The notes beneath the pieces were generated by a model. The model saw nothing but the letters and a program-made list of their open reading frames with translations, was not told where the DNA came from and made no database searches. Made by a program: the position numbers and the translations under genes. Below, piece by piece: positions 28,407 to 41,677 of a DNA stretch of 64,000 bases; the stretch's first letter is position 1; each line of letters starts with the position of its first letter. The stretch is from the IMG/VR virus record IMGVR_UViG_3300045125_000071, positions 124,001 through 188,000 of that record; one strand, given 5' to 3'.

Positions 28407-28507
28407 AATGACAAAAAATTTTTTTTCAATTTTACTATATTTTTCCAAAAAAAATTTTTGTTACGGGATTGACCCCTGTTTAGACCCCCTAAAAATGCCT
28501 ATATAGA

Positions 28508-28561
28508 GGGGGGATACCATGGGGGAGGGGGTAGGTAGGGTGCATATAGGTAGGTAGGGGG
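28508..28561 (+). other. G-run tract (G-quadruplex-like) at the array boundary
   Basis: Several G3-G6 runs and GGTAGG repeats, preceded by C-runs at 28472-28489. Confidence 0.6.
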
Positions 28562-28562
28562 T

Positions 28563-28577
28563 AAACTAGACAAAATC
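28563..28577. repeat. cassette palindrome 1 (right arm only)
   Basis: AAACTAGACAAAATC; left arm replaced by the G-tract. Confidence 0.85.
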
Positions 28578-28698
28578 CAGCCGCCCCCCGTACCTGCTGA
28601 ACTTCAGCATGGCTTTAACAAATGATTAACCTATTGTGTGTTCGTATATGGATATGTTTCGTATATTTGCTTATTCAATCACCTAAACCTTTTACGCC

Positions 28699-28989
28699 AT
28701 GCAAATCAAGACTTCTTACGCGCACCCAGTGAACTTCAGTGTTGATGTGAACATCGAAGACGGTTTCATCAGTTATAATGTTAAGGTATCCGAAACCGAG
28801 TTGGAGATTACCTACTCATATGCCGATACTCGCACGGGTGTAACCAAGGCGCAGATTAATGCGGGTGCAGACTTCATCCGCGAGAGCCTCAAAAATCGCA
28901 CCCTGCACCTGCCCACCTTCATTCCCATTGCAGACATCGCAGATGTTGACCAATGGGATGGTGTTGCGGAGCAAGTGTATCCCGAATAG
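28699..28989 (+). CDS. cassette 1 hypothetical protein (paralog of 31820)
   Basis: Lies between promoter and terminator; LHLPTFIP...QWDG shared with 31820. Confidence 0.85.
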   Translation: MQIKTSYAHPVNFSVDVNIEDGFISYNVKVSETELEITYSYADTRTGVTKAQINAGADFIRESLKNRTLHLPTFIPIADIADVDQWDGVAEQVYPE

Positions 28990-29068
28990 GCTCACCACAC
29001 ACATTCAATGCCCACCGATTGGTGGGCATTTTTTTTGCCCCAACCCGACGGGGACTCGACCGCCGTTA

Positions 29069-29113
29069 GATTTTCTCTAGTTTCAAAGTGCTATGATAAA
29101 ACTAGAGAAAATC
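29069..29113. repeat. cassette palindrome 2
   Basis: GATTTTCTCTAGTTT-N15-AAACTAGAGAAAATC (compensatory change in both arms). Confidence 0.95.
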
Positions 29114-29255
29114 TCGGAAGCCCCAGATTCCTCCTCGGTTGGTTTAACAATACATTAGCGATGTATTAACATGATATTAGCAAAAGGTGAGCGTATCTTT
29201 GTGGCTCACCTAAACCACCGCATGAGTCGAGCGGTTCACCAAACGACACCACACC

Positions 29256-29699
29256 ATGGCAAACCCAATGCCCGCTGCTTCTCTCCTGCACCTGATTTCC
29301 GAAGAAACCAAAGAACTGAAGGGCGCACCCTTCACCGTGCGTTCCAAGCGCACGGGCGTAGACTTCACCTACAAGGTGACCCAGTCCGTTTTCAAGGACG
29401 TGCGCTACTTTCACGTCAAGGTCGAGAAGATGCTTGATGGCATCCTCGGCTTTTACTACCTCGGCTACTTCCGTGCCGATGAGGGGAAGATTTTTGCCAA
29501 AGGTCGTGTGCCCGTGGAAACCCCTTCTGCCCTCGCCATTGGCTGGGTGCTGCGCAAGGCATTCGCAAAGGATGCTGCTGCGCTTGATGAGGGCGTGGAA
29601 GCGTTCAACCTCGGTTCGTGCTGCGTGTGTGGTAAGCGTCTGTCCGATGCTCGTAGCATCGAGTTGGGTATTGGTCCCGTCTGCCGTGGTGAGCGTTAA
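29256..29699 (+). CDS. DUF6011-like zinc-finger domain protein
   Basis: C-terminal CCVCGKRLSDARSIELGIGPVC. Confidence 0.7.
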   Translation: MANPMPAASLLHLISEETKELKGAPFTVRSKRTGVDFTYKVTQSVFKDVRYFHVKVEKMLDGILGFYYLGYFRADEGKIFAKGRVPVETPSALAIGWVLRKAFAKDAAALDEGVEAFNLGSCCVCGKRLSDARSIELGIGPVCRGER

Positions 29700-29935
29700 T
29701 CGCTTTCATCCCCGATATTGAAACCCCGTCCATGTGACGGGGTTTTTTGTTTCTATCCCTAAACGAATTTAAAGCCTTTTACGGGCGTTTCTTGTTCCAA
29801 TAGTATCCTACTATTGTTTTCTGATTATCGTCTATTGTAGGGGGTTCTAAAACGATTAAGCAAAACGGACAACCAAAACGTGGGAACAGACATTCTTGCT
29901 GTGAGGCTGAAGCGACGGGACGCTTCCCCAGTTCG

Positions 29936-29980
29936 GATTTTGTCTAGTTTTATGTTATTGTTGTGAAACTAGACAAAATC
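29936..29980. repeat. cassette palindrome 3
   Basis: Consensus arms, N15. Confidence 0.95.
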
Positions 29981-30123
29981 TTGCCGCCCGTACCTGCTGA
30001 GCGATGGGGTTTGTCTTTAACAATACATTAGCAATGTATTAACATTTTATTTGGAAATTGTGTGCGTATCTTTGTGGCTCACCTAAACCACCGCATGAGC
30101 CGAGCGGACAAACGGCACACACC

Positions 30124-30495
30124 ATGGGTCTTGATATGTACATTCAGCGCCGAGTTAATGGCGGTCAGTCCGAGCAGGTTGGCTACTTTCGGAAATTCTA
30201 CGCCCTCCATGATTGGATTGGCATTCATGTGGGTGAGGTTGAGAACCTTGCCCCCGTTGTCCTGTCCGAGGAAGTCCTTCAGAACTTGTCCATGACGTTG
30301 GAAAATGTCATGGATTGTCCCGAATTGGCTCGCCTGACCTTTCCACCCGAAAAGAACTACGGGGATATTGACCCGTGGTATTTCCATCGGGTCGGAACTG
30401 CCTTGGAGTTGGTGTGGAAACTCCGTATGGAGGCTTCCGTTGCCCTTCAAGAGCGTGGCGAAGTCCACGAACTTGAATATGTGGCGTGGTGGTGA
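30124..30495 (+). CDS. MGLDMY-family phage protein (paralog of 53013)
   Basis: MGLDMY...VGYFRKFYALHDWI...YVAWW. Confidence 0.8.
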   Translation: MGLDMYIQRRVNGGQSEQVGYFRKFYALHDWIGIHVGEVENLAPVVLSEEVLQNLSMTLENVMDCPELARLTFPPEKNYGDIDPWYFHRVGTALELVWKLRMEASVALQERGEVHELEYVAWW

Positions 30496-30717
30496 CCTTG
30501 CCCGTATCCCACAAAGCCCGTCCGATGTGACGGGCTTTTTTATTTTCATCCCTTACCCAATTTCAAGCCCATTACGGGCTTTTTTCATTACTGATGGTAT
30601 CTACATATCACCCGAAGATTATCGTTCAATTTTGGGCGTTATAATGCGTTTAAGCAAATGGTCATCCAAAACGTGGGAACAACGATTTCCCTGGCGACGG
30701 GACGCTTCCCCAGTTCG

Positions 30718-30765
30718 GATTTTGTCTAGTTTTAGATTTTAATAGTTTCAAAACTAAACAAAATC
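30718..30765. repeat. cassette palindrome 4
   Basis: N18, right arm AAACTAAACAAAATC. Confidence 0.95.
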
Positions 30766-30959
30766 TGCCCGTCCAAAGCCAGGTCGCAGACTGCCAAAAT
30801 CCTTTAACAATACATTAGCACATCATTAACATTATATTTGCATATTGCACCCTATCTTTGTTGCAGTTCTTTGATAGACGGACTATCTTACATAGCCTTG
30901 CAGGTGCAAGGTGGGTAGATGATATTTTAACTTTTTTTCACCTAAAAAAACCTAAACAC

Positions 30960-31556
30960 ATGGCACAGAAAGTTCAAATGAGCGTACTTGATTTCGTATT
31001 ATTTATGCTCCGTTTCACGCACCGCCACATGGCAGGATTGACCGCTGAAACCTGCCTTGATAATGCCCAAATGAAGGGTGGTAAAGCCACCGCTGCAAAG
31101 TATGGTGGTTATGTCACGAAGTTGTCACGGATAACGTGGAATCACTCCGTGGACTACGAAAACGCAGTCAAAAACAAACTTGTAAAGTTTGGTCTTGACC
31201 CCGAAGCGTTTATCGCAGGTGAGCATAGGTTTGCAAAACGTGCGCTTTGTGACGGAAAGTTGACCACTATGGCTTATCACAAAGATGATGAACATCTACC
31301 TATATCCGAGCGTAGGTGGTATCTTGTGGCTTACATCATGGACGGCATCGTAAAAAGCAAATATGCTTACACGGATGCCAACGGCAACGAAGTTGATGCT
31401 GATACGCTCCATGCCGACCTTTATGATAAGCGTTCACGCAAACAAGCGGATGCAGGTCTAACGGAAATTGAGCAGCAGGTAATCTATCGGAATTATTCGG
31501 TGGAAAATTTGCGGAACATTCGCTTTGAAGGCTACGATATTGACATCGTGCAGTAA
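30960..31556 (+). CDS. hypothetical phage protein
   Basis: Start MAQKVQMSV after a CCTAAACAC leader; terminator follows. Confidence 0.8.
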   Translation: MAQKVQMSVLDFVLFMLRFTHRHMAGLTAETCLDNAQMKGGKATAAKYGGYVTKLSRITWNHSVDYENAVKNKLVKFGLDPEAFIAGEHRFAKRALCDGKLTTMAYHKDDEHLPISERRWYLVAYIMDGIVKSKYAYTDANGNEVDADTLHADLYDKRSRKQADAGLTEIEQQVIYRNYSVENLRNIRFEGYDIDIVQ

Positions 31557-31648
31557 TACAATGCCACCCGAAAGGGTGGCATTTTTTTTGGCTAAAATTT
31601 AACGTTAACAAACCCTTAACAATCGGAAAATCTGGCTGCCACCGTTCG

Positions 31649-31693
31649 GATTTTGTTTAGTTTTAGATTGGTATTACAAAACTAGACAAAATC
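31649..31693. repeat. cassette palindrome 5
   Basis: Left arm GATTTTGTTTAGTTT, N15. Confidence 0.95.
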
Positions 31694-31819
31694 TGCGCTG
31701 GGGACGCTGGCTGAGGCACGGGTGGGTTGCGCTTTAACATATGATTAACCCCAAGTATTATGTGGGGATGAATATGCGATGTATATTTGCTTATTCAATC
31801 ACCCCTAAATCTTTAAGTC

Positions 31820-32109
31820 ATGCAAATTAATGGTTCTTACGCCCTCCCAAGCATCTTCAATGTTTCAGTTGAATTCAGTGACAACAGGAACATCACCTAC
31901 AAGGTAGAAGCCGACATCGAAAAAAGGAAGTCGCTATTTCCGTGGATTTGGCTGATGGCACTTTCACGGATGCGGAACGTGAGGAAGGTGCGAATTTCAT
32001 CTGTGCGAGTCTTGTGGATGGCTCTTTACATCTGCCCTCGTTCATCCCTCTGTCCGATGTGGAGGACATTGAGCAGTGGGATGGCATCCATGAGGCTCTC
32101 CAAGCCTGA
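31820..32109 (+). CDS. paralog of 28699 protein (frameshift in A-run at ~31920)
   Basis: Shifted frame gives EEGANFICASLVDGSLHLPSFIPLSDVEDIEQWDGIHEALQA*, which aligns to 28699. Confidence 0.8.
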
Positions 32110-32206
32110 CAATCCTCGAAACGGATTCGATGCCCGACCGAAAGGTTGGGCATTTTTTGCGCTTGAGTGGCGGAAGTTCTGGATACCTGCTGGTTCCCAG
32201 TCAGAG

Positions 32207-32251
32207 GATTTTGTTTAGTTTTAGAAGGGTATTACAAAACTAGACGAAATC
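32207..32251. repeat. cassette palindrome 6
   Basis: N15, right arm AAACTAGACGAAATC. Confidence 0.95.
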
Positions 32252-32384
32252 CAACAGGTGACAGCCAGGAAGTGTGCAACGTATTTGCGGTGGATATGTT
32301 GTGAAAACATTAACATTATATTTTTGGTTATGGTCATGTTCTTTGTATATTTGATTATTATTACACCTTAAACCTTTAATCGTT

Positions 32385-32711
32385 ATGAACAACTACATCA
32401 TCATCAGTCGCACCTTTGTTGAGGTTACCCCCGATAGCGCAGAGGACGGGGAATTTTCCGACCACGGCTTCATTGACGAGCGTGTTGAGGTCACCTTCCC
32501 CGAATTGGTAGACCTCATGTACGAACACTGCCACCCCTCATGTTCCCCCAATGACGGAGGAACGGATGTATGGTACTCAACCGAGATGTACACTTCCGAT
32601 TTTGGGGATGGAACGAACCGCCAAGAAAGCATCCACTTCCATAAGGATAACACCCCGAACATCGCCAAATATTGGAAAATGGCGGCAAGGGCGGCAGGAC
32701 TTGTGGAGTAG
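32385..32711 (+). CDS. hypothetical phage protein
   Basis: 108 aa between promoter and terminator. Confidence 0.8.
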   Translation: MNNYIIISRTFVEVTPDSAEDGEFSDHGFIDERVEVTFPELVDLMYEHCHPSCSPNDGGTDVWYSTEMYTSDFGDGTNRQESIHFHKDNTPNIAKYWKMAARAAGLVE

Positions 32712-32789
32712 TCGCCCACCACCCCCGAACATCCCAGCAGAGATGCTGGGATTTTTTTGCTCTAATAGAACTTCAGGCCCACAGCTCCA

Positions 32790-32838
32790 GATTTTATCTA
32801 GTTTTAAAACTAATCGTATTACAAAACTAGACGAAATC
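32790..32838. repeat. cassette palindrome 7
   Basis: N19. Confidence 0.95.
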
Positions 32839-32967
32839 TACCCGTCCCGCGTGCCTCAAGTGCCTGAAGTACCACTTGTTCCCCTTTGTGATAACATTAA
32901 CAATCAATTTGATTGTTTTTAGTTTATGTGGTGTATATTTGCTTATTCAATCACCTAAACCAATTTT

Positions 32968-33084
32968 ATGAAGCACTTTATTTTTCTTCTCATTCTTACG
33001 GCTATTTATTTCATTTTGTTTCTCACAATTTTTCTGCCATATTTCTTGTGGCATTTCAAAAACACCCCCAACTCGCTCATGTGA
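32968..33084 (+). CDS. small membrane peptide (38 aa)
   Basis: MKHFIFLLILTAIYFILFLTIFLPYFLWHFKNTPNSLM, directly after promoter. Confidence 0.6.
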   Translation: MKHFIFLLILTAIYFILFLTIFLPYFLWHFKNTPNSLM

Positions 33085-33154
33085 ATAAGGGTTACATTCA
33101 GAAAGTAAGAAAAGTTTTCATAAACGATTCAAAACGCCCCCAAACTTTCTGAAC

Positions 33155-33286
33155 ATGAAAAAAATCATCTTCCTTCTGTTCGTATCCATTTTTTTTGCAT
33201 CTTGCATGACCACTCGCACAAAAGTCGGTGGGTGCTACTACTACTATCGACCGAGCATGAAAAACGCCAAATGGCGTTATCTATAA
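33155..33286 (+). CDS. small lipoprotein (43 aa)
   Basis: MKKIIFLLFVSIFFAS-C signal peptidase II lipobox; terminator follows. Confidence 0.7.
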   Translation: MKKIIFLLFVSIFFASCMTTRTKVGGCYYYYRPSMKNAKWRYL

Positions 33287-33372
33287 TTTTCATATGGCAA
33301 GCATCGTTCCCCCTGACATTTCCATGTCGGGGGTTTTTTTGTCCACCAGCATAACCTGGCTGGATGAATCTG

Positions 33373-33417
33373 GATTTTGTCTAGTTTTACAACAGTATTG
33401 CCAAACTAGACGAAATC
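33373..33417. repeat. cassette palindrome 8
   Basis: N15. Confidence 0.95.
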
Positions 33418-33531
33418 TGGAGCTGTTCGAGTCGTCCCTCAACAGTTCGAGACGTTATGAGAACATTAACACTCGATTTGTTTGTGTTTCGGTATTTATC
33501 AGTATATTTGTATAACAAAACACAATACGCC

Positions 33532-33693
33532 ATGAAAAAAGATTATCTACTACGGATTTCCATGTTGCTTCTGCACACCATCTATGTGCTGACCGCTTTT
33601 CCCATCTTGGTATTACAATCCATATGGAAATGGAAGGTGGAATTATTGGATAACCTTTTTACAATTACTTCAGACATTGGCGCATCCTTCTAA
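33532..33693 (+). CDS. small membrane protein (53 aa)
   Basis: One TM helix; lies between promoter and terminator. Confidence 0.65.
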   Translation: MKKDYLLRISMLLLHTIYVLTAFPILVLQSIWKWKVELLDNLFTITSDIGASF

Positions 33694-33839
33694 AAATGTT
33701 CTTCAAGGAGCGTGAACCCAATAGTTACGCAAACTATTATCAGCACATCAGTTTAAAATAGTTCAAGGGTTATAGGTGAAACCCCGTCCGAAAGGGCGGG
33801 GATTTTTTGCCCTGAAGAATACGGCGGCTTCCCTGGTGA

Positions 33840-33884
33840 GATTTTGTCTAGTTTCAAAGTGTTATGATAAAACTAGACGAAATC
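33840..33884. repeat. cassette palindrome 9
   Basis: N15. Confidence 0.95.
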
Positions 33885-33993
33885 TGACCTGATGCGGGCT
33901 GGACCTGCTGGTGGTGGGTATCTTGTGAAAACATTAACATTTGAAAACATCGTATTACCGATATGGGGTGTATATTTGCATAAACAATAAGAC

Positions 33994-34179
33994 ATGAAAC
34001 TGAATATCGCAACAAAACTGAACGAACTTCAAGAGGAGGTTCTGAAAATTGAAAACGAGGATGCCCGTCACTTTGAAATCAAAGAAATTGCCGAGATGGT
34101 AACGGCATGGTATGATGGAAATGTCGAGAGGCGCAGAAGGATTGCAGAAGAAAAAAACTTCACCAAACAACACCAGTAA
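33994..34179 (+). CDS. hypothetical protein
   Basis: Follows promoter. Confidence 0.7.
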   Translation: MKLNIATKLNELQEEVLKIENEDARHFEIKEIAEMVTAWYDGNVERRRRIAEEKNFTKQHQ

Positions 34180-34180
34180 T

Positions 34181-34339
34181 ATGCACATCACAAGACATCG
34201 CACGAAACTCGCATGGAGGTGCTTCAAAAAGTATCTTCAAGACAAAAGCATCCCAAATGTGTTCGCTCGTGTTTATTGGGCGTTCATGTCCGCACGTTGG
34301 TATTTCCTTTATCCCAAATGTAGTTTCCAAAAAGATTAG
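34181..34339 (+). CDS. small basic protein (52 aa)
   Basis: MHITRHRTKLAWRCF...; coupled to upstream stop. Confidence 0.55.
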   Translation: MHITRHRTKLAWRCFKKYLQDKSIPNVFARVYWAFMSARWYFLYPKCSFQKD

Positions 34340-34437
34340 GGTTTAGGTGTTTTTTCATAGGTTAGCAATCATCCCCCGACATTTCCATGTCGGGGATTTT
34401 TTTGCTCAGCCAATGAAGTCCTGGTTTCCCCGTGTAA

Positions 34438-34482
34438 GATTTTGTCTAGTTTTAAAAACGTATTACAAAACTAGACAAAATC
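34438..34482. repeat. cassette palindrome 10
   Basis: Consensus arms, N15. Confidence 0.95.
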
Positions 34483-34592
34483 TGACCTGATGCTGTGCAG
34501 GTAGGTTGCACAGCAAAACGGTTTAACAACGTGTTAACAACATCATTCGGATATGGGGTGTATATTTGCATAAACATTAAAACCTAAACACT

Positions 34593-34918
34593 ATGCCCTA
34601 CATCAGCGAGAAAAAACATGGATTAAGACAGACGGTTGGAGAGGTTACGTTCAACCCGTCAATGCGGTGGGATGCTGCAACTGCACAGGGGATTGGAGTG
34701 ATTCACCCTGCCCCACAAGTGTGGTCTTGGAGGAAATCAACGGTTTCAAAAAACTGTTGAAGGCAAACGGCATCCAACACAAAAGAGTGGTAACACAATC
34801 GAGCAACGTGTTCATGGTGAAGGTGAACATATTGGTTCACCCGAACGACAGGGAACGCGCCTTGGAATTGGCAAAAGAGCATGAGCAAAACACCCGACTA
34901 TTCTATCGGGTGTCATAA
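34593..34918 (+). CDS. hypothetical Cys-rich protein (frameshift in A-run)
   Basis: MPYISEKK joins TWIKTDGWRGYVQPVNAVGCCNCTGDWSD... Confidence 0.7.
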
Positions 34919-35021
34919 GATGGTGTTTTTTCATAGGTTAGCAACCCCCCGATGTTTCCACATTGGGGGTTTTTTTGTCCGTCTGGAGGAGGTTCTGGTA
35001 CCTGCTGGTTTCCAGTCAGAG

Positions 35022-35069
35022 GATTTTGTTTAGTTTTGAAACTAGTGGAATATAAAACTAGACAAAATC
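35022..35069. repeat. cassette palindrome 11
   Basis: N18. Confidence 0.95.
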
Positions 35070-35186
35070 TTACCAGAAGCGGGCTGGCTCCTCCTGAACA
35101 CGGGCTTTAACATAACATTAGCAATCGGAATGTTCGGTATTACGTTATCCGTTGTATATTTACATATCACCAAAAACAAAAAACAC

Positions 35187-35522
35187 ATGACAACTGCAAT
35201 CGCTCAAACCTGCAACCAACTCGGCAAAAGGGAATTTGACCCTGCCGAAACTTTGGCGTACTTCAAGGCTCACGGCTTTCTCTTTTGGTCGTGGGGTGCT
35301 TCAAAATTCACCAACTTCAATAACTTGGGGTTGTGCTTCAAAGTGAATGGGCATCACCACAAGGGGTACGTTTTCGTGGCTCTTGATTGGTCGGACACCT
35401 TCGATGTCCATATCATCAACACGCAAGGTCGGGTGCTTGACACCTACAATGAGGTTTACATTGACGAACTTTTCAACGTCATTGACAACCGAATTGAGAA
35501 GATAAAGGACTACGTGCGATAA
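35187..35522 (+). CDS. hypothetical phage protein
   Basis: WSWG...GL.FKVNG..HKG.V...DTFDV...VYIDEL...ID..IE. Confidence 0.8.
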   Translation: MTTAIAQTCNQLGKREFDPAETLAYFKAHGFLFWSWGASKFTNFNNLGLCFKVNGHHHKGYVFVALDWSDTFDVHIINTQGRVLDTYNEVYIDELFNVIDNRIEKIKDYVR

Positions 35523-35585
35523 CTCAAACCGCCCCCGATGTAATGTCGGGGGTTTTTTCTATTTTTGTTAAATAAATCTAATATC

Positions 35586-35855
35586 ATGGAACTTGTAGCA
35601 ATTATCATATCATTGTTGTTAGTAATCCTTTATTTATATGCTCGTTATGTTGAATTAAAACATGTGAAAAATTTAAAAGATGAATATATTCTTTCGTTAG
35701 AGGATTTTGTCGATAAACAAAAGATTCATATTAACACATTAGAGGAACTGGTTAGTGTGTATAGACAAAAAGATAAATATAATGAAGATGTCATACAGGC
35801 AAAAGATGGTATAATTAAAGCGTATGAAACACAGGATAAATATTATTTGAATTAA
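35586..35855 (+). CDS. membrane-anchored coiled-coil protein
   Basis: MELVAIIISLLLVILYLY TM helix; AT-rich compared with neighbours. Confidence 0.65.
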   Translation: MELVAIIISLLLVILYLYARYVELKHVKNLKDEYILSLEDFVDKQKIHINTLEELVSVYRQKDKYNEDVIQAKDGIIKAYETQDKYYLN

Positions 35856-35920
35856 ATTTGGTTTGTAAATATAAACGTATTACCTTTGCAACATATTAAT
35901 AACAATTAAAAATAAAAAGT

Positions 35921-36298
35921 ATGACAAAGATTTTCAATGGTACTCCCCACGCCATCAATGTAGTTGATAACGGCACTTTTGATTCTGCTCTGCGTAAGTA
36001 TGTGACAGACACCCCCAACGTGGTTGCCTCAATCCCTTCCAATGGGGTGTTGAGCGCAAAAATAGTTACGAAGGATGGTGACCCTATCAATGGCATCCCG
36101 ACCTTTTTCAAAGGTACCAACGGCTTTGACCCCATCCCTGACGGGTATGACGTGGTAATCGTTTCCGCTCTTTACGCTTCTGCCGTTCGGTCGAATGGCT
36201 TGACAGATACGTCGAAACTCTTTACCGTGGCTGACCCCGTTTATTCCACGGACGGCAAGACAATCCACGGATGTAGGGGCATCTGCCCTTTCATTTAA
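35921..36298 (+). CDS. hypothetical phage protein
   Basis: N.TPH.IN...IVSAL...L.TV...V......I.GC motif set. Confidence 0.75.
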   Translation: MTKIFNGTPHAINVVDNGTFDSALRKYVTDTPNVVASIPSNGVLSAKIVTKDGDPINGIPTFFKGTNGFDPIPDGYDVVIVSALYASAVRSNGLTDTSKLFTVADPVYSTDGKTIHGCRGICPFI

Positions 36299-36393
36299 GA
36301 CATAGTGTTTTTCATAGGTTAGCAATCACCCCCTGACATTTCCATGTCGGGGGTTTTTTTGCTCAGTACTCTTGGCTCGTGCGTCCCAGTCGG

Positions 36394-36442
36394 GATTTTG
36401 TCTAGTTTTAAAACTAATCGTATGACAAAACTAGACAAAATC
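36394..36442. repeat. cassette palindrome 12
   Basis: Consensus arms, N19. Confidence 0.95.
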
Positions 36443-36551
36443 CTTTCAGGCGGGGCCAGGCGGATTCCAAAACAGACCATTAACAGAAAATTAACGGGTG
36501 GGATGTCGGGTAATACAGAATAAAGTGTATTTTTGCTGAAAATAATTTAAT

Positions 36552-37090
36552 ATGAAAAAGACATTGATAATTCACCCAAAGGACAGAAGCACGGATTTTC
36601 TCAAACCGATATATGAGGATATAACCTATAAGACAATCATTTCGGGTGACTTAACAAGATTGCACGTTTTATCTGAAATTAATAGCCATGACAGGATAAT
36701 AATGATGGGGCATGGTTCACCGATGGGATTGTTCGGGGTGAATTTTAATTGTGGTTTCATTATTGACGAACTTGCGGTGGAATTATTGAGAAAAAAGAAA
36801 ACTATTTCATTTGGTGTTATGCCAGTGAATTTGTTAAAAGGCATAAGCTGAATGGTTTTTCCACTGGAATGTTCATAAGCGAAACCTATGAAGCAATGAG
36901 TTGTGGTGTTACTGCAACGAAGGAAGATGTTGTGAATAGCAATTCTGTGTTTGCTGAAATGATGCGTAAAACTATAATGAAAGAACAAAGCGAGGTGTTT
37001 AATAGCGTTTCAAAAGCGTATGACAAGTACGCAAAAGAAGCCAATAACAATGTGGCAAGGTATAACCATGAAAGGTTGATATTGATATAA
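36552..37090 (+). CDS. hypothetical protein (frameshifted)
   Basis: LIIHPKD.STDFL...MMGHGSP.GL; WC.A..F...GMFISE after the shift. Confidence 0.7.
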
Positions 37091-37172
37091 TGTCTTTTGA
37101 AAACTTTAACAAATAATATTTGGTTTTTATTTTCAGGTAATGTAAATTGCATCAAACCTTAAATCAAAAGTT

Positions 37173-37610
37173 ATGAGAAACTTCAATGAATTTTATTCGT
37201 ACATTCTGAATCTTATGAAGGATGAAATCTCTATCACGGGAACGTATCAAGGAAAATTGTTTTGTCTGGTTGATGACGCAAATAATATTTGTACTGCGGA
37301 AATCCCCAACAAGAATTTGGATGATATGGGTGATTTGTTTTTGAAAGTCATGCAAACCCAACATCTTATTGATGAGTTTCCCGTTCGACTGCGAAACGAT
37401 GGTATGACACCTTTGGCGTTTGCCCACACGGAATTGTTTTATTCCGAAACATCATCAAGGATTGCTTTCATCAAGATTGCCATAGATGATGATGGTGATA
37501 ATGTTGTTTTGGAACATAAAAAATATGAAATCAAAAACAATGAAATCATTGTGGATGAAAAGGGTAATCTGAAAAAACAAAAAGTGAAACTGGTCGAAAT
37601 CGAAGAATAA
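37173..37610 (+). CDS. hypothetical protein
   Basis: 145-aa ORF with upstream TAAATTG box. Confidence 0.7.
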   Translation: MRNFNEFYSYILNLMKDEISITGTYQGKLFCLVDDANNICTAEIPNKNLDDMGDLFLKVMQTQHLIDEFPVRLRNDGMTPLAFAHTELFYSETSSRIAFIKIAIDDDGDNVVLEHKKYEIKNNEIIVDEKGNLKKQKVKLVEIEE

Positions 37611-37671
37611 AAATATAAAAGTTTTTTTTGGTGAATTAAAAATTATTCATAACTTTATCAAAACTTAAAAC

Positions 37672-38136
37672 ATGGAACAAGAAAAAATGGTAAAATGTCT
37701 TTTCTTCTTTGATGAGATGAAGAATAAGGCGATGAAAGAAATCCGTGAAACGGGTACGTTGCACGCTGCGATTTTTGCTCTTACCGAAAAGGAAGATAAT
37801 GGTAAGAAATGCGTTGCTGCTGCGATGATACCGAACTTCATGGGAAAAAACGGAATTGAACTTCTGACTTCGGTGATTCGCCTTACAATAGGGTTGAGGA
37901 TGTTCGTGGACAAGGTTGAAGAACAAGAGGAAACAAAAGTCATCGCTGTTTTTCATTGCGAATTGTTAGATGATGAGAACGGACAAAAGTTGTACACGAT
38001 GCGGAAATTTTGTGATAATGGGAATGATAGTGATGACAATATCAAGGTGTACAATCTTGTTCATGGCGATAGCACCGTTGATGAGAACGGCAACATCGTA
38101 GCACCCGAACTTGAATTTGTGGAGGATGAGGAATGA
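37672..38136 (+). CDS. hypothetical protein
   Basis: 154-aa ORF followed by terminator. Confidence 0.7.
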   Translation: MEQEKMVKCLFFFDEMKNKAMKEIRETGTLHAAIFALTEKEDNGKKCVAAAMIPNFMGKNGIELLTSVIRLTIGLRMFVDKVEEQEETKVIAVFHCELLDDENGQKLYTMRKFCDNGNDSDDNIKVYNLVHGDSTVDENGNIVAPELEFVEDEE

Positions 38137-38222
38137 TTTGATTTAAGGTTTAGGGTAGTCCCCGTCCGAAAGGATGGGGATTTTTTTGCTCAGCCTGGCC
38201 GTCGCCTGGTTATTACCTGTCG

Positions 38223-38264
38223 GATTTTGTCTAGTTTTGTGTTGTTTTAAAACTAGACAAAATC
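38223..38264. repeat. cassette palindrome 13
   Basis: Consensus arms, N12. Confidence 0.95.
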
Positions 38265-38353
38265 TCTACTGTTGGGCCTGGATGCTCCAAAAAAACTTCA
38301 AATATTTTTTGGTTATTCCAAAATACATTGTATCTTTGCTGAAACAATAAACA

Positions 38354-38542
38354 ATGAATAATAACAAAATGAAAGGAAAAAGAATTCGGTTGATTAAAAT
38401 GGTAGACCCGCAAGCCGTTCCGAACGAAACCACGGGAACAATCACCCATGTGGATGGTATAGGTCAGATTCACGTTAAATGGGATAATGGTAGGAGCCTT
38501 GCCATCATTCCCGAAGAGGATGAGTACGAGATAATCGATTAG
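38354..38542 (+). CDS. DUF4314 domain protein
   Basis: GKRIRLIKMVDP..P....GTI..VD.IGQIHVKWDNG.SLAII...D. Confidence 0.8.
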   Translation: MNNNKMKGKRIRLIKMVDPQAVPNETTGTITHVDGIGQIHVKWDNGRSLAIIPEEDEYEIID

Positions 38543-38607
38543 GAACTAAAGAAACTTTGTAATAACTTTGCGCAAGATTTGTTAAACAATAATTAAAACT
38601 TAAAAAA

Positions 38608-38952
38608 ATGCGTTATTTGAAATTGACTTATGCAGGAAAGAATTCCCCCACATTGGTGAACATGGATGATGTTCGGACGATGTACATGGTATCTGACCCG
38701 AATGGTCGATACGAGCCGTCAACAAAGGTTGTTTTCAAAAATGGTGAATACATAAACGTGTCGGAGGACTTGCAGACAATATTGAAACTGACCCAGGATT
38801 TCAATTCGGGCAAGTATCAAGAAACCGATTGGGAAACCCCGCCAATCGTTCCTAGCGTCCAACAAAGGATGGAAAATTCCTTCACACGTAGGAGATACAA
38901 TCGCGAACGCAATTTCAATCACGAAAGCGCGTACAACGATAATCAATGGTAG
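38608..38952 (+). CDS. hypothetical protein (FlbD-like N-terminal fold)
   Basis: YLKLT......LVNMD.V......TKVVF.NG....V.E. Confidence 0.55.
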   Translation: MRYLKLTYAGKNSPTLVNMDDVRTMYMVSDPNGRYEPSTKVVFKNGEYINVSEDLQTILKLTQDFNSGKYQETDWETPPIVPSVQQRMENSFTRRRYNRERNFNHESAYNDNQW

Positions 38953-39043
38953 TTGTTCATGGTGTTTTATGTTTTGCCCCCGTCATACAAATGGCGGGGG
39001 TTTTTTATTGTCGCTACTGGAACTGTTCAGGCCCACCAGTCGG

Positions 39044-39088
39044 GATTTTGTCTAGTTTAAGACAGGTATTACAAAACTAGATAAAATC
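39044..39088. repeat. cassette palindrome 14
   Basis: N15. Confidence 0.95.
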
Positions 39089-39213
39089 TTCCCTGTCGTG
39101 GGCTGGCGTGTTGTAACCTATTTACAATCCAAGTGTTAGGATAATTTTAACAATTAAAAATTGGATAGATTTTGAACATGATTTAGTTTTGTGTCAGAAT
39201 AAAATTAAACCAT

Positions 39214-39681
39214 ATGAATTTGAATGTCGCACAAAAGTTGGCAAACGACCTATTGATTGAACATGGTCTTGTTCAGAAAGGTTGGTACTTTCAATTTGAT
39301 AATAGCAAAAGGCGTTTCGGTGTTTGCAAATATGGTAAAAAGGTTATTGGTCTTTCACGGGAATTGACGTTGCTCAACGACGTTGTAAATGTTAAAGATA
39401 CTATCCTGCACGAAATAGCCCACGCCATTGCAGGACGAGGTGCTGGACATGGTTGGTTGTGGAAACAAGTTTGCATCCGCATCGGGGCAAAGCCTGAAAG
39501 GTGTTATTCAAGCAATGAGGTCAATACGCCACTACTGAAATATCAAGCAACGTGTGGTGCTTGTGGTGCGCTGCATCAGAAAGCAAAAATGCACAAAAAG
39601 GGTGTGAGAAGGTCTTGCAAATGTCAAAGCGGAAAAGATTGGGATAGTAGGGTATTACTTGAATATAAGGCATATTATTGA
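39214..39681 (+). CDS. SprT-like zinc metalloprotease
   Basis: RRFGVC...IGLS...DTILHEIAHA...GHG..WK.V...IG. Confidence 0.85.
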   Translation: MNLNVAQKLANDLLIEHGLVQKGWYFQFDNSKRRFGVCKYGKKVIGLSRELTLLNDVVNVKDTILHEIAHAIAGRGAGHGWLWKQVCIRIGAKPERCYSSNEVNTPLLKYQATCGACGALHQKAKMHKKGVRRSCKCQSGKDWDSRVLLEYKAYY

Positions 39682-39938
39682 AAAAAACTTATTATCTTTA
39701 CATTCTAAAAACACAATCACCATATATTATGAAATACATATTTAGAGGAAATGTTATATTTGAATACATTCCTGAAAAACAGGAAGTGATTCAGAATAAA
39801 ATACATCAAGTTATACCTGCATTTGATTATTGTAGAATGATACCTGAAGATTACAAATTGTTGGGTGAGTTTTTTGATAAAGCATATAGACACACCAAAG
39901 GAGAAGAAATTGTTTTAAATGATATTATAGTAAGTTAA
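39678..39938 (+). CDS. hypothetical protein
   Basis: ORF track; TTG start overlaps upstream stop. Confidence 0.5.
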   Translation: MKKTYYLYILKTQSPYIMKYIFRGNVIFEYIPEKQEVIQNKIHQVIPAFDYCRMIPEDYKLLGEFFDKAYRHTKGEEIVLNDIIVS

Positions 39939-39944
39939 AAGTAC

Positions 39945-40056
39945 AGTCAGGTGGCGAAACGGTAGACGCACGGAAGGCATTCCGATTCTCCCTTGTTAGG
40001 AGGCATCCAAAAGCAAGGGCATAGCATGAATACAGGTTCGAATCCTGTCCTGACTA
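39945..40056 (+). ncRNA. tRNA-like RNA lacking a canonical anticodon loop
   Basis: Acceptor AGTCAGG/CCTGACT; D-arm GCG-AAACGGTAGA-CGC; T-arm ACAGG-TTCGAAT-CCTGT; CGGAA-GGCA-TTCCG (4-nt loop) plus a long extra arm. Confidence 0.75.
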
Positions 40057-40215
40057 CTTAAAAAATAAACTTATGATACTTGTTAAAGAAAATAAGGGAT
40101 TTGCTGTTTACTTTGATACCAATACCCAAACGTATTTGGTTTTCAAAGATGGCGGATTCTTAATAGGAAACAAATACAAGTTCAGTGATGTAAAATCTTA
40201 TTTGGATTGATATTC

Positions 40216-40294
40216 AGTCAGGTGGTGTAATGGTAGCACACGGAGAAGAACTCACCAAAAGGTAGAGCCGACACGGAGTATAGGTTCGATTCCT
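40216..40294 (+). ncRNA. 5' part of a second tRNA-like element, interrupted in the T-arm
   Basis: AGTCAGG-TG-GTG-TAATGGTAG-CAC ... ATAGG-TTCGATT-CCT; matching 3' part at 41401-41423. Confidence 0.75.
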
Positions 40295-40323
40295 CGCGCA
40301 GGCCCTCATCAAAACACACGCAA

Positions 40324-40467
40324 ATGAACACGCACACGATTGAGGTATCCATCCCATCTAATGTTGACCTTGAGCATACATTTTATGCGGTGTTGGATGC
40401 GCTTTGCGCTTCCGACAATGTTACACAGGGGAGGTTGAATTGGTTTTACAAACCATTCGAAAACTAA
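40324..40467 (+). CDS. small hypothetical protein (47 aa)
   Basis: MNTHTIEVSIPSNVDLEHTFYAVLDALCASDNVTQGRLNWFYKPFEN after an AAAACACAC leader. Confidence 0.55.
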   Translation: MNTHTIEVSIPSNVDLEHTFYAVLDALCASDNVTQGRLNWFYKPFEN

Positions 40468-40537
40468 ATTTACAAACCATTCGAAAAAAGAAAAGAGAAA
40501 AGTTCGGTTTAGACCTATAATGTGCAATGACCTCCGC

Positions 40538-40577
40538 GCCCTGCAGTGGTTGAGCGGTTCGATTCCGCAGTGGGGCC
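40538..40577 (+). ncRNA. armless tRNA-like minihelix (acceptor stem + T-arm)
   Basis: GCCCTGC/GTGGGGC 7-bp stem, AGTGGTTG linker, GCGG-TTCGATT-CCGC. Confidence 0.5.
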
Positions 40578-40610
40578 TAAACTGCGCTGCACAGGACAAA
40601 GCAGCAACAC

Positions 40611-40711
40611 ATTATGAACGTTTCGGGGCTTTGCGTAGTAGCCCTTAGTATAAACTTAAAATTAACCACGACACTTGATAGGGCTATTACGCAAAACCCT
40701 TGTTATGTGCC
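40611..40711 (+). other. integron attC-like recombination site
   Basis: ...AAC-GTTTC-GGGGCTTTGCGTAGTAGCCCT-N34-AGGGCTATTACGCAAAACCC-TT-GTTATGTGCC: long imperfect stem with unpaired bases ending in a GTT core. Confidence 0.65.
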
Positions 40712-40728
40712 GTTAAATTTTTAAAACG

Positions 40729-41169
40729 ATGTCAAAATTAAAAACAGCTCAAGATTTAATTAAAACAAATAACAGTTCAGTTATGGCTGGGTTCAATATG
40801 TTTATTCACGGACACCCACCTATTACATTTGCAGATGGTTACCACGATGCTTATGACAGAATGCAAGGTTATGAATTTGCTCAAAAAATGGCAAAAGAAG
40901 ATGGTATTGCTTTTACAAAAATATTCAAATGTAAAGAAGGGGATTGCCACCCGTTTCAGTATGGCGGTTTCTTCGTGTGTAATAATTGCGGCAGGAAAGG
41001 TGTAGATAAAGAATGGTGGAAAATTCAAGTTGAAAAAGACGGAAATGAATTTTGTTGTCACGGATTGGATTTTGTCAACTTGCAGGAAAGTTCAAACTAC
41101 GCTTTCGGTAAAACGTTTGAAGAAGCAATTTCTAATTACGAAAAGGTTATGTTAGGGTTGTCCGCTTAA
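40729..41169 (+). CDS. hypothetical Cys/zinc-binding protein in an integron-cassette-like unit
   Basis: C..CG motif; flanked by GTTATGTGCC (40702) and its inverse GGCACATAAC (41171). Confidence 0.75.
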   Translation: MSKLKTAQDLIKTNNSSVMAGFNMFIHGHPPITFADGYHDAYDRMQGYEFAQKMAKEDGIAFTKIFKCKEGDCHPFQYGGFFVCNNCGRKGVDKEWWKIQVEKDGNEFCCHGLDFVNLQESSNYAFGKTFEEAISNYEKVMLGLSA

Positions 41170-41369
41170 TGGCACATAACACTCAAATATTCGCATTCGA
41201 GACGTGGAGCAATGGAGGAATCCAAACGTCAGCATTTTATGAGGGGGATGAAGCAATGAATTTCATTGCTCGCCACGAGCAAAGTGGCACATTCGCTACA
41301 TTGCACGTCTTCAAAAATGAGAAAGAGGCCCTACAGGCTTACGAAGATTTTCGTAGCGAGGGGAACTGA
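41169..41369 (+). CDS. hypothetical protein
   Basis: 66 aa, coupled start overlapping the inverse core site. Confidence 0.55.
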   Translation: MAHNTQIFAFETWSNGGIQTSAFYEGDEAMNFIARHEQSGTFATLHVFKNEKEALQAYEDFRSEGN

Positions 41370-41510
41370 CCCCTCCCCCCGACCTGCAATGGTTTCAGCG
41401 AGGTTCGATTCCTATCTTGGCTACTCGTTCCGTCTAATCAACGGATAATATGCCCCAACCGAAAGGTTGGGGTTTTTTGTTTCTGGCGCTTCCTGCTGTT
41501 CTTCTGGAAA

Positions 41511-41550
41511 GATTTTGTCTAGTTTTGAAATGGTAAAACTAGACGAAATC
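41511..41550. repeat. cassette palindrome 15
   Basis: N10. Confidence 0.95.
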
Positions 41551-41677
41551 CAACAGGTACCAGCCAGGCGACGGGCTTGGGCAACCTGTTAACGGGCTTT
41601 AACATACAATTAACAACAATTATTTTGATAGCGATTATACGCAACATATCTTTGCATAAACAATTAAATCATAAGCC

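What the first reader, a model, noticed from the sequence alone, without database searches (positions are those of the whole stretch)
29069..29113. Compensatory change and variable spacer suggest the palindrome acts as a hairpin or cruciform
Seen: copy 2 has G>C in the left arm and the matching C>G in the right arm, keeping perfect pairing. Most other variants (GTTTAG, CTAAAC, GACGAA) are transitions that give a G-T pair on one strand. Spacer length varies from 10 to 19 nt (mode 15), with a semi-conserved GTAT(T/G)ACA against the right arm. Established: loxP/dif-type sites have fixed 6-8 bp spacers, whereas folded ssDNA substrates (attC, REP/HUH) and hairpin promoters tolerate variable loops. 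Inference: structure-based recognition, or two independently bound half-sites.
Basis: partly seen in the sequence, partly recalled or inferred. Interest (0 to 1): 0.7.

Follow-up and report, generated by a model that had tools for sequence, protein, structure and literature searches.

The report
Paired cassette-end sites in jumbo phage
The 45-bp "palindrome" is one of 22 head-to-head junctions between small early-gene cassettes of a freshwater T4-like jumbo phage; its two 16-bp arms behave as separately read cassette ends at which genes get shuffled, not as a folded hairpin.

Summary
Window 29069-29113 carries G>C in the left arm and the mirror C>G in the right arm. The family is far beyond chance: 45 arms against 0.26 expected, all inside one 28-kb island of a 251-kb phage contig.

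The compensatory change is a single event and is not significant. Within lineages, uncompensated arm changes outnumber compensated ones 39 to 4.

Every copy lies between a terminator and a Bacteroidota-type promoter. Each arm is helically phased with CTGG/CCAG motifs in its own flank. The right arm is also phased with the promoter. The two arms are not phased with each other.

Left flank plus left arm, spacer, and right arm plus right flank reassort independently among copies. A lone right arm behind a conserved G-rich leader starts the array in six related lineages.

Relatives carry different arm sequences at the same positions, in both arms and in lone arms alike. Cassettes are swapped, inverted, duplicated or lost exactly at these sites.

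No recombinase, HUH enzyme or known regulator was found.

Best reading: paired, independently recognised duplex half-sites that mark cassette boundaries and serve as recombination junctions. This resembles PeSL cassettes of T4-type phages, with an added element. Hairpin or cruciform function is not supported.

The parts
28468..28561 (+). Conserved G-rich leader that starts the array, placed where the GC content jumps from about 27% to over 45%
   Evidence: the same leader precedes a lone right arm in L139, L125, G001, L193 and L194.
28562..28577 (+). Lone right arm TAAACTAGACAAAATC, the first cassette end of the array
   Evidence: It has no left partner. TTAACA follows at +38 and the -7 box at +85.
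29069..29113 (+). Copy 1, the flagged copy. Spacer 13. Left arm G7C and T16C, right arm C10'G.
   Evidence: The upstream T-run ends 32 nt before it. Its spacer is related to that of copy 8.
29936..29980 (+). Copy 2. Spacer 13. Right arm A1'G.
   Evidence: Left flank plus left arm are identical to copy 3, while spacer and right side are unrelated.
30718..30765 (+). Copy 3. Spacer 16. Right arm G8'A. It is the inverted form of copy 18.
   Evidence: pair I1: 98% complementary to 46791-46838, spacer included.
31649..31693 (+). Copy 4. Spacer 13, ending in GTATTAC. Left arm C9T.
32207..32251 (+). Copy 5. Spacer 13, with GTATTAC. Left arm C9T, right arm A11'G.
   Evidence: the left flank is shared with copy 10 only. 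Orthologous junctions are aligned.
32790..32838 (+). Copy 6. Spacer 17, with GTATTAC. Left arm G7A, right arm A11'G.
   Evidence: The spacer is shared with copy 11.
33373..33417 (+). Copy 7. Spacer 13, with GTATTGC. Right arm A1'C and A11'G.
   Evidence: the T-run ends 32 nt upstream.
33840..33884 (+). Copy 8. Spacer 13. Left arm T16C, right arm A11'G.
   Evidence: Right arm plus right flank are shared with copy 9 (family D3).
34438..34482 (+). Copy 9. Spacer 13, with GTATTAC. Both arms match the consensus.
   Evidence: As single-stranded DNA it folds at -13.2 kcal/mol.
35022..35069 (+). Copy 10. Spacer 16. Left arm C9T.
   Evidence: The only apparent read joint here is explained by paralogy with the flank of copy 5.
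36394..36442 (+). Copy 11. Spacer 17, with GTATGAC. Consensus arms.
38223..38264 (+). Copy 12. Spacer 10. Consensus arms. Followed by a TTTGG-type promoter.
39044..39088 (+). Copy 13. Spacer 13, with GTATTAC. Left arm T16A, right arm C10'T.
   Evidence: It lies upstream of the SprT-like gene.
41511..41550 (+). Copy 14. Spacer 8. Right arm A11'G.
42076..42117 (+). Copy 15. Spacer 10. Right arm A1'T.
43272..43311 (+). Copy 16. Spacer 8. Consensus arms.
44910..44956 (+). Copy 17. Spacer 15. Right arm A1'C. Upstream of the DUF932 gene.
   Evidence: The orthologous site in G001/L101 carries an unrelated palindrome.
46791..46838 (+). Copy 18. Spacer 16. Consensus arms.
50625..50667 (+). Copy 19. Spacer 11. 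Right arm G8'A.
52252..52298 (+). Copy 20. Spacer 15, with GTATGAC. Consensus arms.
   Evidence: The spacer is shared with copy 22.
56002..56043 (+). Copy 21. Spacer 10. Consensus arms.
56940..56986 (+). Copy 22, the last one. Spacer 15, with GTATGAC. Consensus arms.
28578..60200 (+). The island: 23 plus-strand transcription units. Each has the order right arm, phased CCAG flank, promoter, one or more small genes, terminator, phased CTGG flank, left arm.
   Evidence: GC content falls with distance from the leader (rho -0.59, p 0.003).
59943..60330 (+). Non-coding end of the island, with a cluster of GTAT(T/G)AC, a DnaA-box-like 9-mer and a 35-nt block conserved in G001

Best explanation
The palindrome is not one structural unit. 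It is the head-to-head junction of two cassette ends.

Anatomy:
- The island at window 28.5-60 kb is an array of about 23 self-contained early-gene cassettes.
- Each cassette starts with the right arm AAAACTAGACAAAATC, then 3-5 helically phased CCAG motifs and a Bacteroidota-type promoter.
- Each cassette ends with an intrinsic terminator, three phased CTGG motifs and the left arm GATTTTGTCTAGTTTT.
- A short, freely varying linker joins neighbouring cassettes.

Shown:
- The arms are identical half-sites kept constant as sequence, not as a pairing.
- Each arm belongs to its own cassette side.
- The arm sequence is specific to each phage lineage, while its position is conserved.
- Cassette swaps, inversions, duplications and losses between relatives have their breakpoints at these sites.

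Inferred:
- Each arm, with its phased flank, is bound as duplex DNA by a phage-encoded, lineage-specific protein that has not been identified.
- That complex acts as a boundary or operator element for the early transcription units. On the terminator side it would act as an insulator or roadblock. On the promoter side it would act as a face-of-helix-dependent regulator.
- The 16-bp arms are the only long identities between cassettes, so recombination within them shuffles cassettes and keeps all copies alike.
For: Sequence constraint:
- There are 45 arms against 0.26 expected, confined to one island.
- 12 of 16 arm positions are invariant, while flanks and spacers are unalignable.

Placement and phasing:
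- The terminator T-run ends 31-37 nt before the left arm in 16 of the 20 copies that have a T-run within 120 nt.
- CTGG occurs 38 times in the flanks against 6.45 expected. 13 of these sit at -17, and the period is 10-11 nt.
- The distance from right arm to TTAACA falls in classes near 38, 49 and 59 nt (period about 10, p about 1e-4). The arm-to-arm distance is not phased.

Independent halves:
- Left flank plus left arm, spacer, and right arm plus right flank reassort independently.
- A lone right arm sits behind a conserved leader in six lineages.
- Lone arms are common in relatives: L125 has 24 arms in the left orientation and 12 in the right, L119 has 5 lone arms, L156 has 5.

Lineage specificity:
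- G001 is syntenic with the island but carries an unrelated palindrome at the same intergenic sites.
- Closer relatives L193, L194 and L195 differ at 1-4 arm positions, in both arms and in lone arms alike.

Shuffling:
- Unit order is 3-4 here and 4-3 in L193, L194 and L195.
- Unit 4 is inverted in L195 and unit 1 in L193.
- Units 2, 7, 12 and 13 are absent from relatives. Units 0/4 and 1/2 are paralogues.
- Indels between L125 and L124 are bounded by half-sites.
Against: - No binding protein was identified. There is no HTH_3 or MotA match in the 251-kb record, and only about 75% of the genome is held.
- The one small candidate DNA binder, an AP2-like protein at 59736-59942, has an invariant sheet across lineages whose arms differ. 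It therefore cannot explain arm specificity.
- The phasing statistics treat copies as independent although they are related.
- A regulatory role is inferred from position only. The RNA data are too thin to show transcript ends.
- Concerted evolution by gene conversion could keep the arms alike without any protein.
- The symmetric change in copy 1 and the between-lineage symmetry are also what a pairing constraint would give.
Confidence: 0.5

Rival explanations
1. The arms are the ends of mobile gene cassettes handled by a dedicated but unrecognised site-specific recombinase or transposase. This would be an integron-like or transposon-like gene-capture platform. The leader plus lone right arm would be the entry site, and the phased flank motifs would be accessory binding sites.
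For: - Cassettes are bounded by 16-bp inverted ends with phased subterminal motifs.
- A conserved leader plus lone arm starts the array in six lineages.
- Cassettes next to the leader have the highest GC and GC3 and have no counterpart in G001.
- Single cassettes are inverted, swapped, duplicated or lost between close relatives, precisely at the sites.
- Arms specific to each lineage are what a co-evolving enzyme and site pair gives.
Against: - No tyrosine or serine recombinase, Y1 transposase or rve-type DDE domain was found in 251 kb.
- There are no target-site duplications in the linkers (read).
- Linker length and sequence vary freely, which classical strand-exchange sites do not allow.
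- Cassettes carry their own promoter and terminator.
- The distal half of the array is colinear with a distant relative.
- T4-type homologous recombination acting on the repeats explains the same rearrangements.
Confidence: 0.2
2. The inverted repeat folds into a hairpin in single-stranded DNA, or a cruciform in supercoiled DNA, and the fold is what is recognised. Possible roles would be a priming or nicking site, a hairpin promoter, or a substrate of a junction resolvase that starts recombination.
For: - As single strands the copies fold at -7 to -13 kcal/mol, with z-scores of -5 to -8.
- There is one mirror G>C / C>G change.
- Arms stay complementary in every lineage.
- Spacer length is free.
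- GTAT(T/G)AC recurs in the loops of several lineages whose arms are unrelated. It matches 7 of the 9 bases of the circovirus/nanovirus nick site, recalled from memory.
- One copy is the exact flip of another (pair I1).
Against: - Covariation within the genome is not above shuffles.
- There are 39 uncompensated against 4 compensated changes within lineages.
- Lone arms keep the exact sequence.
- All 9 pairs in L125 carry the same mismatch.
- All copies share one sequence, which a structural signal does not need.
- Each arm is phased with duplex-face motifs in its own flank.
- By established knowledge of cruciform extrusion, loops of 8-41 nt disfavour it.
- No HUH or Y1 enzyme was found (the last two with silent controls).
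- GTATTAC is also part of ordinary -7 boxes in this island.
Confidence: 0.13
3. The repeats have no function of their own. They are selfish or neutral repeats, MITE-like or a by-product of unequal recombination, kept alike by gene conversion.
For: - Copies are mosaic and are homogenised within each genome.
- No binder and no enzyme were found.
Against: - Positions are conserved between distant relatives while the sequences are replaced.
- Distances to terminator and promoter are constrained and helically phased.
- Flank motifs lie outside the repeated core.
- The array-start architecture is conserved in six lineages.
Confidence: 0.1
4. The element acts in RNA, as a 16-bp AU-rich hairpin in read-through transcripts. 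It would serve as a processing site, like the RNase III sites between T7 early genes, or as a back-up terminator.
For: - On the plus strand, 9 of the 12 single-arm variant cells outside the innermost pair give G-U.
- One contig from an RNA library spans copy 2.
Against: - The element lies downstream of strong intrinsic terminators and upstream of the next promoter.
- The 9 cells come from only three variant types, which are shared by descent.
- Lone arms cannot fold.
- There is no Rfam match.
- The RNA contigs have depth 2-6 and could derive from DNA.
Confidence: 0.05

Closest known systems
PeSL (promoter-early stem-loop) cassettes of T4-type phages (Arbiol et al. 2010, PMC2839356; Comeau et al. 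2014, PMC4122927)
   Same: - The host genome is a T4-type phage.
- The elements sit in a hyperplastic region of small, mostly unknown genes.
- Each gene or gene pair is flanked by a composite of terminator stem-loop and early promoter.
- The motifs differ between phage lineages.
- Insertions, deletions and replacements between relatives sit at the elements.
   Different: - PeSLs consist only of the terminator stem-loop and the promoter.
- Here an extra pair of 16-bp inverted arms with phased GC-rich flanks lies between terminator and promoter.
- The array has a conserved G-rich leader with a lone arm.
- Single cassettes are inverted.
- The promoters are of the Bacteroidota type (TAnnTTTG), not sigma-70.
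Repeated operator sets of phages and plasmids: ESAS of cluster K mycobacteriophages (PMC11373665); from memory also the phiC31 conserved inverted repeats, L5 stoperators and RK2 KorB operators
   Same: - One short conserved site is repeated at many intergenic places of one genome.
- The site is associated with promoters or transcript boundaries.
- ESAS is a 15-17-bp imperfect inverted repeat with a 12-14-bp spacer whose role is still unclear.
   Different: - Those sites have a fixed or nearly fixed half-site spacing, and in ESAS they overlap the promoter.
- Here the spacing runs from 8 to 17 nt.
- The site lies 29-59 nt upstream of the -33-side promoter element (TTAACA or TTTGG), not over it.
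- Its left half is tied to the terminator.
- No cognate protein is known.
Integron attC/attI cassette arrays
   Same: - A one-directional array of small gene cassettes is separated by imperfectly conserved inverted repeats of variable central length.
- A special first site sits at one end.
- The cassettes that look newest lie next to it.
   Different: - There is no integrase.
- The arms are conserved as sequence and lack bulged bases.
- Every cassette has its own promoter and terminator.
- The distal cassettes are syntenic across distant relatives.
REP/BIME elements with RAYT (Y1 HUH) transposases
   Same: - Both are extragenic and lie after terminators.
- Both form inverted pairs with linkers of several types.
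- The sequence is specific to a genome lineage.
   Different: - Each REP is itself a small palindrome with a 5' GTAG. The arms here are not.
- There is no RAYT gene.
- The elements are confined to one island instead of being spread through the genome.

Membership tests
PeSL-type regulatory cassettes of T4-type phages | The host genome is a T4-type phage | tested here: met
   A gp23-type major head protein, a portal and a large terminase were found. The head protein matches T4-like phages, the nearest named one being Flavobacterium phage immuto.
PeSL-type regulatory cassettes of T4-type phages | A composite of terminator stem-loop and early promoter is repeated between small genes of a variable region | tested here: met
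   Terminators and TAnnTTTG promoters flank each unit. The cargo is mostly genes of unknown function.
PeSL-type regulatory cassettes of T4-type phages | Insertions, deletions and replacements between relatives have their breakpoints at the elements | tested here: met
PeSL-type regulatory cassettes of T4-type phages | Excised mini-circles carrying one element are detectable in infected cells | not testable with these tools
   Only low-depth contigs of public runs are available.
Integron (attC / attI / IntI) | An IntI-type tyrosine recombinase is present | tested here: not met
   PF00589 has no match in the 251-kb record, and the control genomes rang. The record is about 75% complete.
Integron (attC / attI / IntI) | The site is conserved as an imperfect fold with bulged bases, not as sequence | tested here: not met
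   The arms are 97% Watson-Crick or wobble paired, have no bulges, and 12 of 16 positions are invariant.
Integron (attC / attI / IntI) | Cassettes have no promoter and are expressed from a common promoter | tested here: not met
   Each unit has its own promoter and terminator.
loxP / FRT / dif-type sites | A fixed 6-8-bp asymmetric spacer lies between the two binding arms | tested here: not met
   Spacers are 8, 10, 11, 13, 15, 16 and 17 nt and differ in sequence.
REP / RAYT | A Y1 (HUH) transposase gene is present | tested here: not met
   PF01797 has no match, and the controls rang.
REP / RAYT | Each repeat is itself an imperfect palindrome preceded by GTAG | tested here: not met
   A 16-nt arm has no internal dyad, and no GTAG precedes it.
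HUH Rep origin (nonanucleotide in a hairpin loop) | A conserved nick motif lies in the loop of every copy | tested here: not met
   GTAT(T/G)AC is present in 8 of 22 loops only. The same 7-mer is also part of ordinary -7 boxes.
HUH Rep origin (nonanucleotide in a hairpin loop) | A Rep gene is present | tested here: inconclusive
   PF02407 and PF01446 found nothing, but the control genomes were silent too.
N4-type hairpin promoters | A 5-7-bp stem with a 3-nt loop lies at a fixed distance from the transcription start | tested here: not met
   Stems are 16 bp and loops 8-17 nt. The distance to the promoter varies from 40 to 97 nt.
N4-type hairpin promoters | A virion RNA polymerase is encoded | not tested
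   No search for a single-subunit RNA polymerase was run.
Repeated operator regulon (ESAS, phiC31 CIR, KorB type) | A cognate DNA-binding protein is encoded by the element | tested here: inconclusive
   No HTH_3 or MotA match was found. One AP2-like 68-aa protein is a weak candidate for another motif. Most small proteins were not scanned.
Repeated operator regulon (ESAS, phiC31 CIR, KorB type) | The spacing between the half-sites is fixed | tested here: not met
   Centre-to-centre distances run from 24 to 33 bp and are not helically phased.

The most novel reading that the evidence does not exclude
A clade of freshwater Bacteroidota-infecting T4-like jumbo phages carries a dedicated gene-cassette platform. 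Autonomous early-gene cassettes would be bounded by lineage-specific 16-bp inverted ends with phased accessory motifs. An as yet unrecognised recombinase or transposase would capture them next to a conserved G-rich leader with a lone end, and would then move, invert and exchange them. This would be a phage counterpart of the integron, using double-stranded, promoter-bearing cassettes.
Probability: 0.17. Interest if true: 0.85.

Novelty: new variant of a known kind. Interest (0 to 1): 0.55.

Why it matters
Variable regions full of small unknown genes are where large phages keep host-takeover and anti-defence functions. How those regions gain, lose and regulate genes is poorly understood outside the PeSL work on coliphages and vibriophages.

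This array gives a sharply defined architecture, seen in dozens of uncultured phage contigs:
- a conserved leader;
- lineage-specific cassette ends;
- phased flank motifs;
- autonomous promoter and terminator units.

Cassette swaps and inversions are visible between close relatives.

If a protein reads the arms, it is a new global regulator or boundary factor of early phage transcription. If an enzyme acts on them, it is a new cassette-exchange system. Either way, the arms can be used as computational landmarks to delimit accessory-gene cassettes in this phage clade.

Tried and rejected
- Exact-motif scan of viral contigs: the 16-mer gave 80 single chance hits, and the paired pattern gave none.
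- The paired pattern in metagenome contigs gave three hits (L085-L087). Inspection shows them to be unrelated long hairpins in other contexts. Genome contigs gave none.
- Megablast of the island against the phage collection found no match.
- Stop-codon reassignment as the cause of the short ORFs is not supported.
- Read laying: only low-depth Logan contigs were available. The single "goes back 2815" joint is paralogy between the flanks of copies 5 and 10. There is no evidence of circles or inversions in the population.
- Rfam gave only sub-threshold hairpin look-alikes. There are no tRNA genes in the window.
- Searches for a tyrosine recombinase, serine recombinase, Y1 transposase, rve, Viral_Rep, Rep_1, HTH_3 and MotA C-domain were all negative.
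- Target-site duplications around cassettes: none seen in the linkers.
- A promoter inside the palindrome: no TAnnTTTG lies at the right distance from the TTTG of either arm (read).
- A palindrome extended into copy-specific flanks: the flanks share motifs but are not complementary to each other.
- The MITE reading was rejected because the two halves of a copy have different histories and orthologous sites differ in concert between lineages.

Full report
**What the window is.** The window is bases 124001-188000 of a 251,358-bp IMG/VR viral contig, linear and about 75% complete.
- The genome encodes a gp23-type major head protein, a portal, a large terminase, a ribonucleotide reductase and a tRNA nucleotidyltransferase.
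- Its head protein matches T4-like phages. The nearest named one is Flavobacterium phage vB_FspM_immuto, at about 41% identity.
- Promoters of the TAnnTTTG type, A-rich leaders and the lack of Shine-Dalgarno sequences point to a Bacteroidota host. This is an inference.
- Public runs that hold the sequence are freshwater metagenomes.
- The genome is about 29% GC. Window 28.5-60 kb is an island of 35-51% GC.

**The observation.**
- Window 29069-29113 is one of 22 complete copies of GATTTTGTCTAGTTTT, a spacer of 8-17 nt, and AAAACTAGACAAAATC. One further lone right arm lies at 28562-28577.
- There are 45 arms with at most two mismatches against 0.26 expected. None lies outside the island in the whole 251 kb.
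- The flagged copy does carry G>C at 29075 and the mirror C>G at 29107.
- Its innermost pair is a C-A mismatch, so it is not perfectly paired.
That a transition leaves a G-T pair on one strand is true of any transition.
- Read as half-sites, the same variants (C9T, G7A) occur in both orientations.
- GTAT(T/G)AC abuts the right arm in 8 of 22 copies, against 0.003 expected.

**Is there covariation?**
- Within the genome, 12 of 16 pairs never vary, and one cell in 352 is a compensated double change. 219 of 500 column shuffles do as well.
- A search with the DUF6011 protein of unit 1 found closer relatives with slightly different arms:
  - L193: GATTTTGTCTAGGTTT
  - L194: GATTTTGTTTAGTTCA
  - L195: GATTTTGTTTAGTTCT
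- Between lineages the fixed differences are mirrored in both arms, so the arms stay complementary.
- Every copy in a genome carries these differences, and so do the lone arms, which have nothing to pair with.
- Within lineages, single-arm changes outnumber compensated ones 39 to 4.
- In the L125 lineage all nine pairs carry the same mismatch at one position.
- This pattern fits identical half-sites kept alike across a genome. It does not fit selection on pairing.

**Anatomy around each copy.**
- All genes of the island are on the plus strand.
- Upstream of each copy lies an intrinsic terminator. Its T-run ends 31-37 nt before the left arm in 16 of the 20 copies that have a T-run within 120 nt.
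- Downstream lies a promoter of one of two classes: TTAACA about 31 nt ahead of GTATATTTG, or TTTGG about 20 nt ahead of TAnnTTTG.
- The flanks are 57% GC. CTGG occurs 38 times there against 6.45 expected, mirrored on the two sides.
- Thirteen CTGG motifs sit at -17 from the arm, with further clusters at -7 and -27/-28, giving a period of 10-11 nt.
- The distance from right arm to TTAACA falls into classes near 38, 49 and 59 nt (period about 10, p about 1e-4).
- The centre-to-centre distance of the two arms is not phased.
- So there are two half-elements joined by a free linker. One is terminator, phased flank and left arm. The other is right arm, phased flank and promoter.

**The halves have separate histories.**
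- Copies 2 and 3, and copies 5 and 10, share left flank and left arm but nothing to the right.
- Copies 1/8, 6/11, 20/22 and 4/5/13 share spacers but not flanks.
- Copies 8 and 9 share right arm and right flank.
- Copy 3 is the exact flip of copy 18, spacer included.
- Recombination breakpoints therefore lie in the arms.

**Relatives.**
- G001 (the record behind L100, identical in the 20.8-kb stretch fetched as L101) is syntenic with this genome. The island genes from window 35130 to 59942 are largely colinear at 33-89% amino-acid identity, with 43410 and 55675 out of order.
- G001 has the same layout of terminator, GC-rich flank, palindrome, GC-rich flank and promoter. Its arms are unrelated (ATTATGAATGGCC type), and its flank motif is GATCA instead of CTGG.
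- The site upstream of the DUF932 gene carries a palindrome in both phages.
- The DUF6915 gene led to 80 further viral contigs. Several lineages among them have their own arm families, with variable spacers and many lone arms:
  - L156: AATTAGTGGGGCAA, spacers 15, 25 and 27 nt.
  - L119: GATTTTCTGTGGC.
  - L139, L136 and L125: TTG(T/G)TTGGC.
- GTAT(T/G)AC recurs in the spacers of several of these lineages even though the arms differ.
- A G-rich leader followed by a lone right arm of the local type starts the array in this window and in L139, L125, G001, L193 and L194.

**Cassette shuffling.**
- Unit order is 3-4 here and 4-3 in L193, L194 and L195.
- Unit 4 is inverted in L195, and unit 1 is inverted in L193.
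- Units 2, 7, 12 and 13 are absent from the relatives. Units 0/4 and 1/2 are paralogues.
- Between L125 and L124 (91% identical), extra promoter-gene-terminator cassettes begin and end at half-sites.
- GC content of the units falls with distance from the leader (rho -0.59, p 0.003).
- The ten units next to the leader have no counterpart in G001.

**What was looked for and not found.**
- No tyrosine or serine recombinase, Y1 transposase or rve domain was found, and the control genomes responded.
- No Viral_Rep or Rep_1 was found, but the controls were silent.
- No HTH_3 or MotA domain was found.
- There is no Rfam family.
- Read data are too thin to show transcripts or junctions.

**Interpretation.**
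- Shown: the arms are cassette-end half-sites conserved as sequence. They are lineage-specific, each tied to its own side, and they are the places where cassettes recombine.
- Inferred: they are read as duplex DNA by an unidentified phage protein and act as boundary or operator elements of the early units. Recombination in the arms keeps them alike and shuffles cassettes.
- The closest described system is the PeSL cassette of T4-type phages. PeSLs lack the separate arm pair, the phased flanks and the leader.
- The ESAS repeats of cluster K mycobacteriophages are a second analogue, and their role is also unknown.
- A dedicated cassette-exchange enzyme remains possible (about 0.2).
- A hairpin or cruciform function is possible but unsupported (about 0.13).
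- The cargo genes are typical accessory or early-type genes: a SAM lyase family protein, DUF932, an SprT-like protein, DUF4241, DUF6915, GP88 and others. An anti-defence role for them is a guess.

Noticed in passing
window 28468-28561: A G-rich leader of about 95 nt sits exactly at the GC jump of a 29%-GC genome. It contains a CCCCC...GGGGGG hairpin followed by G5-A-G5 and TAGG repeats. It is conserved in at least five other lineages and is always followed by a lone right arm. Its role is unknown. Some related contigs end right at it.
   Followed up: partly
window 59943-60330; L101 20028-20600: The non-coding end of the island, where plus- and minus-strand genes converge, holds a cluster of GTAT(T/G)AC repeats. 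It also holds a perfect DnaA-box-like TTATCCACA at 60108-60116 (G001 has one too) and a block of about 35 nt conserved with G001 (GGTCG.GATT.GGAC...GGACAATCCCC). It may be an origin or another protein-loading site.
   Followed up: partly
window 59736-59942 (+): The last gene of the island encodes a 68-aa protein. It is conserved in G001, L127 and L137, with an invariant SYRVRVSV.G..YS.NF stretch. The AlphaFold2 model (pLDDT 77) has several strands followed by one helix. Foldseek matches to AP2 and integrase arm-binding domains are weak (E above 0.1). It is a candidate binder of a motif conserved across lineages, such as GTAT(T/G)AC, but not of the arms.
   Followed up: partly
window 29143-29175 and 30016-30048: The class A promoters of units 1 and 2 contain a second short dyad (AATACAT, 5 nt, ATGTATT) between two TTAACA motifs. 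It may be a separate operator.
   Followed up: no
window 56112-56483 and 56525-56872 (+): Two adjacent ORFs match the N-terminal and C-terminal halves of Pfam GP88. This is a split or frameshifted gene, or two genes derived from one.
   Followed up: no
window 28578-35000: The cassettes next to the leader have 45-51% GC and a GC3 of about 0.6 in a phage of 29% GC. GC declines along the array. This looks like recent import from a source richer in GC.
   Followed up: partly
L154 (252-11352): A contig of 47% GC that also carries the DUF6915 gene has ten perfect GGTGTACT-(CA or TG)-AGTACACC palindromes. Their outer stems are copy-specific and complementary, and they lie about 25 nt upstream of start codons. 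This is a different kind of element, probably a true hairpin.
   Followed up: no
L147 (9949-20237): In another lineage the repeated dyad GGAAAAGT-gaaa-ACTTTTCC lies between the -33 TTTGG and the -7 box of the promoters themselves. That is a classical operator position.
   Followed up: no
genome G000 14384-17656 (-), locus L088: The largest ORF (1090 aa) matches ribonucleotide reductase over residues 15-325 only. Weak primase-like and terminase-like matches follow over residues 357-581. It may hold an intein or a fused mobile element.
   Followed up: no
whole genome G000: There are very few long ORFs for a 251-kb phage: 95 stop-to-stop frames of 200 aa or more. Reassigning TGA or TAG does not help. 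Either genes are genuinely small or the assembly carries frameshifts.
   Followed up: partly
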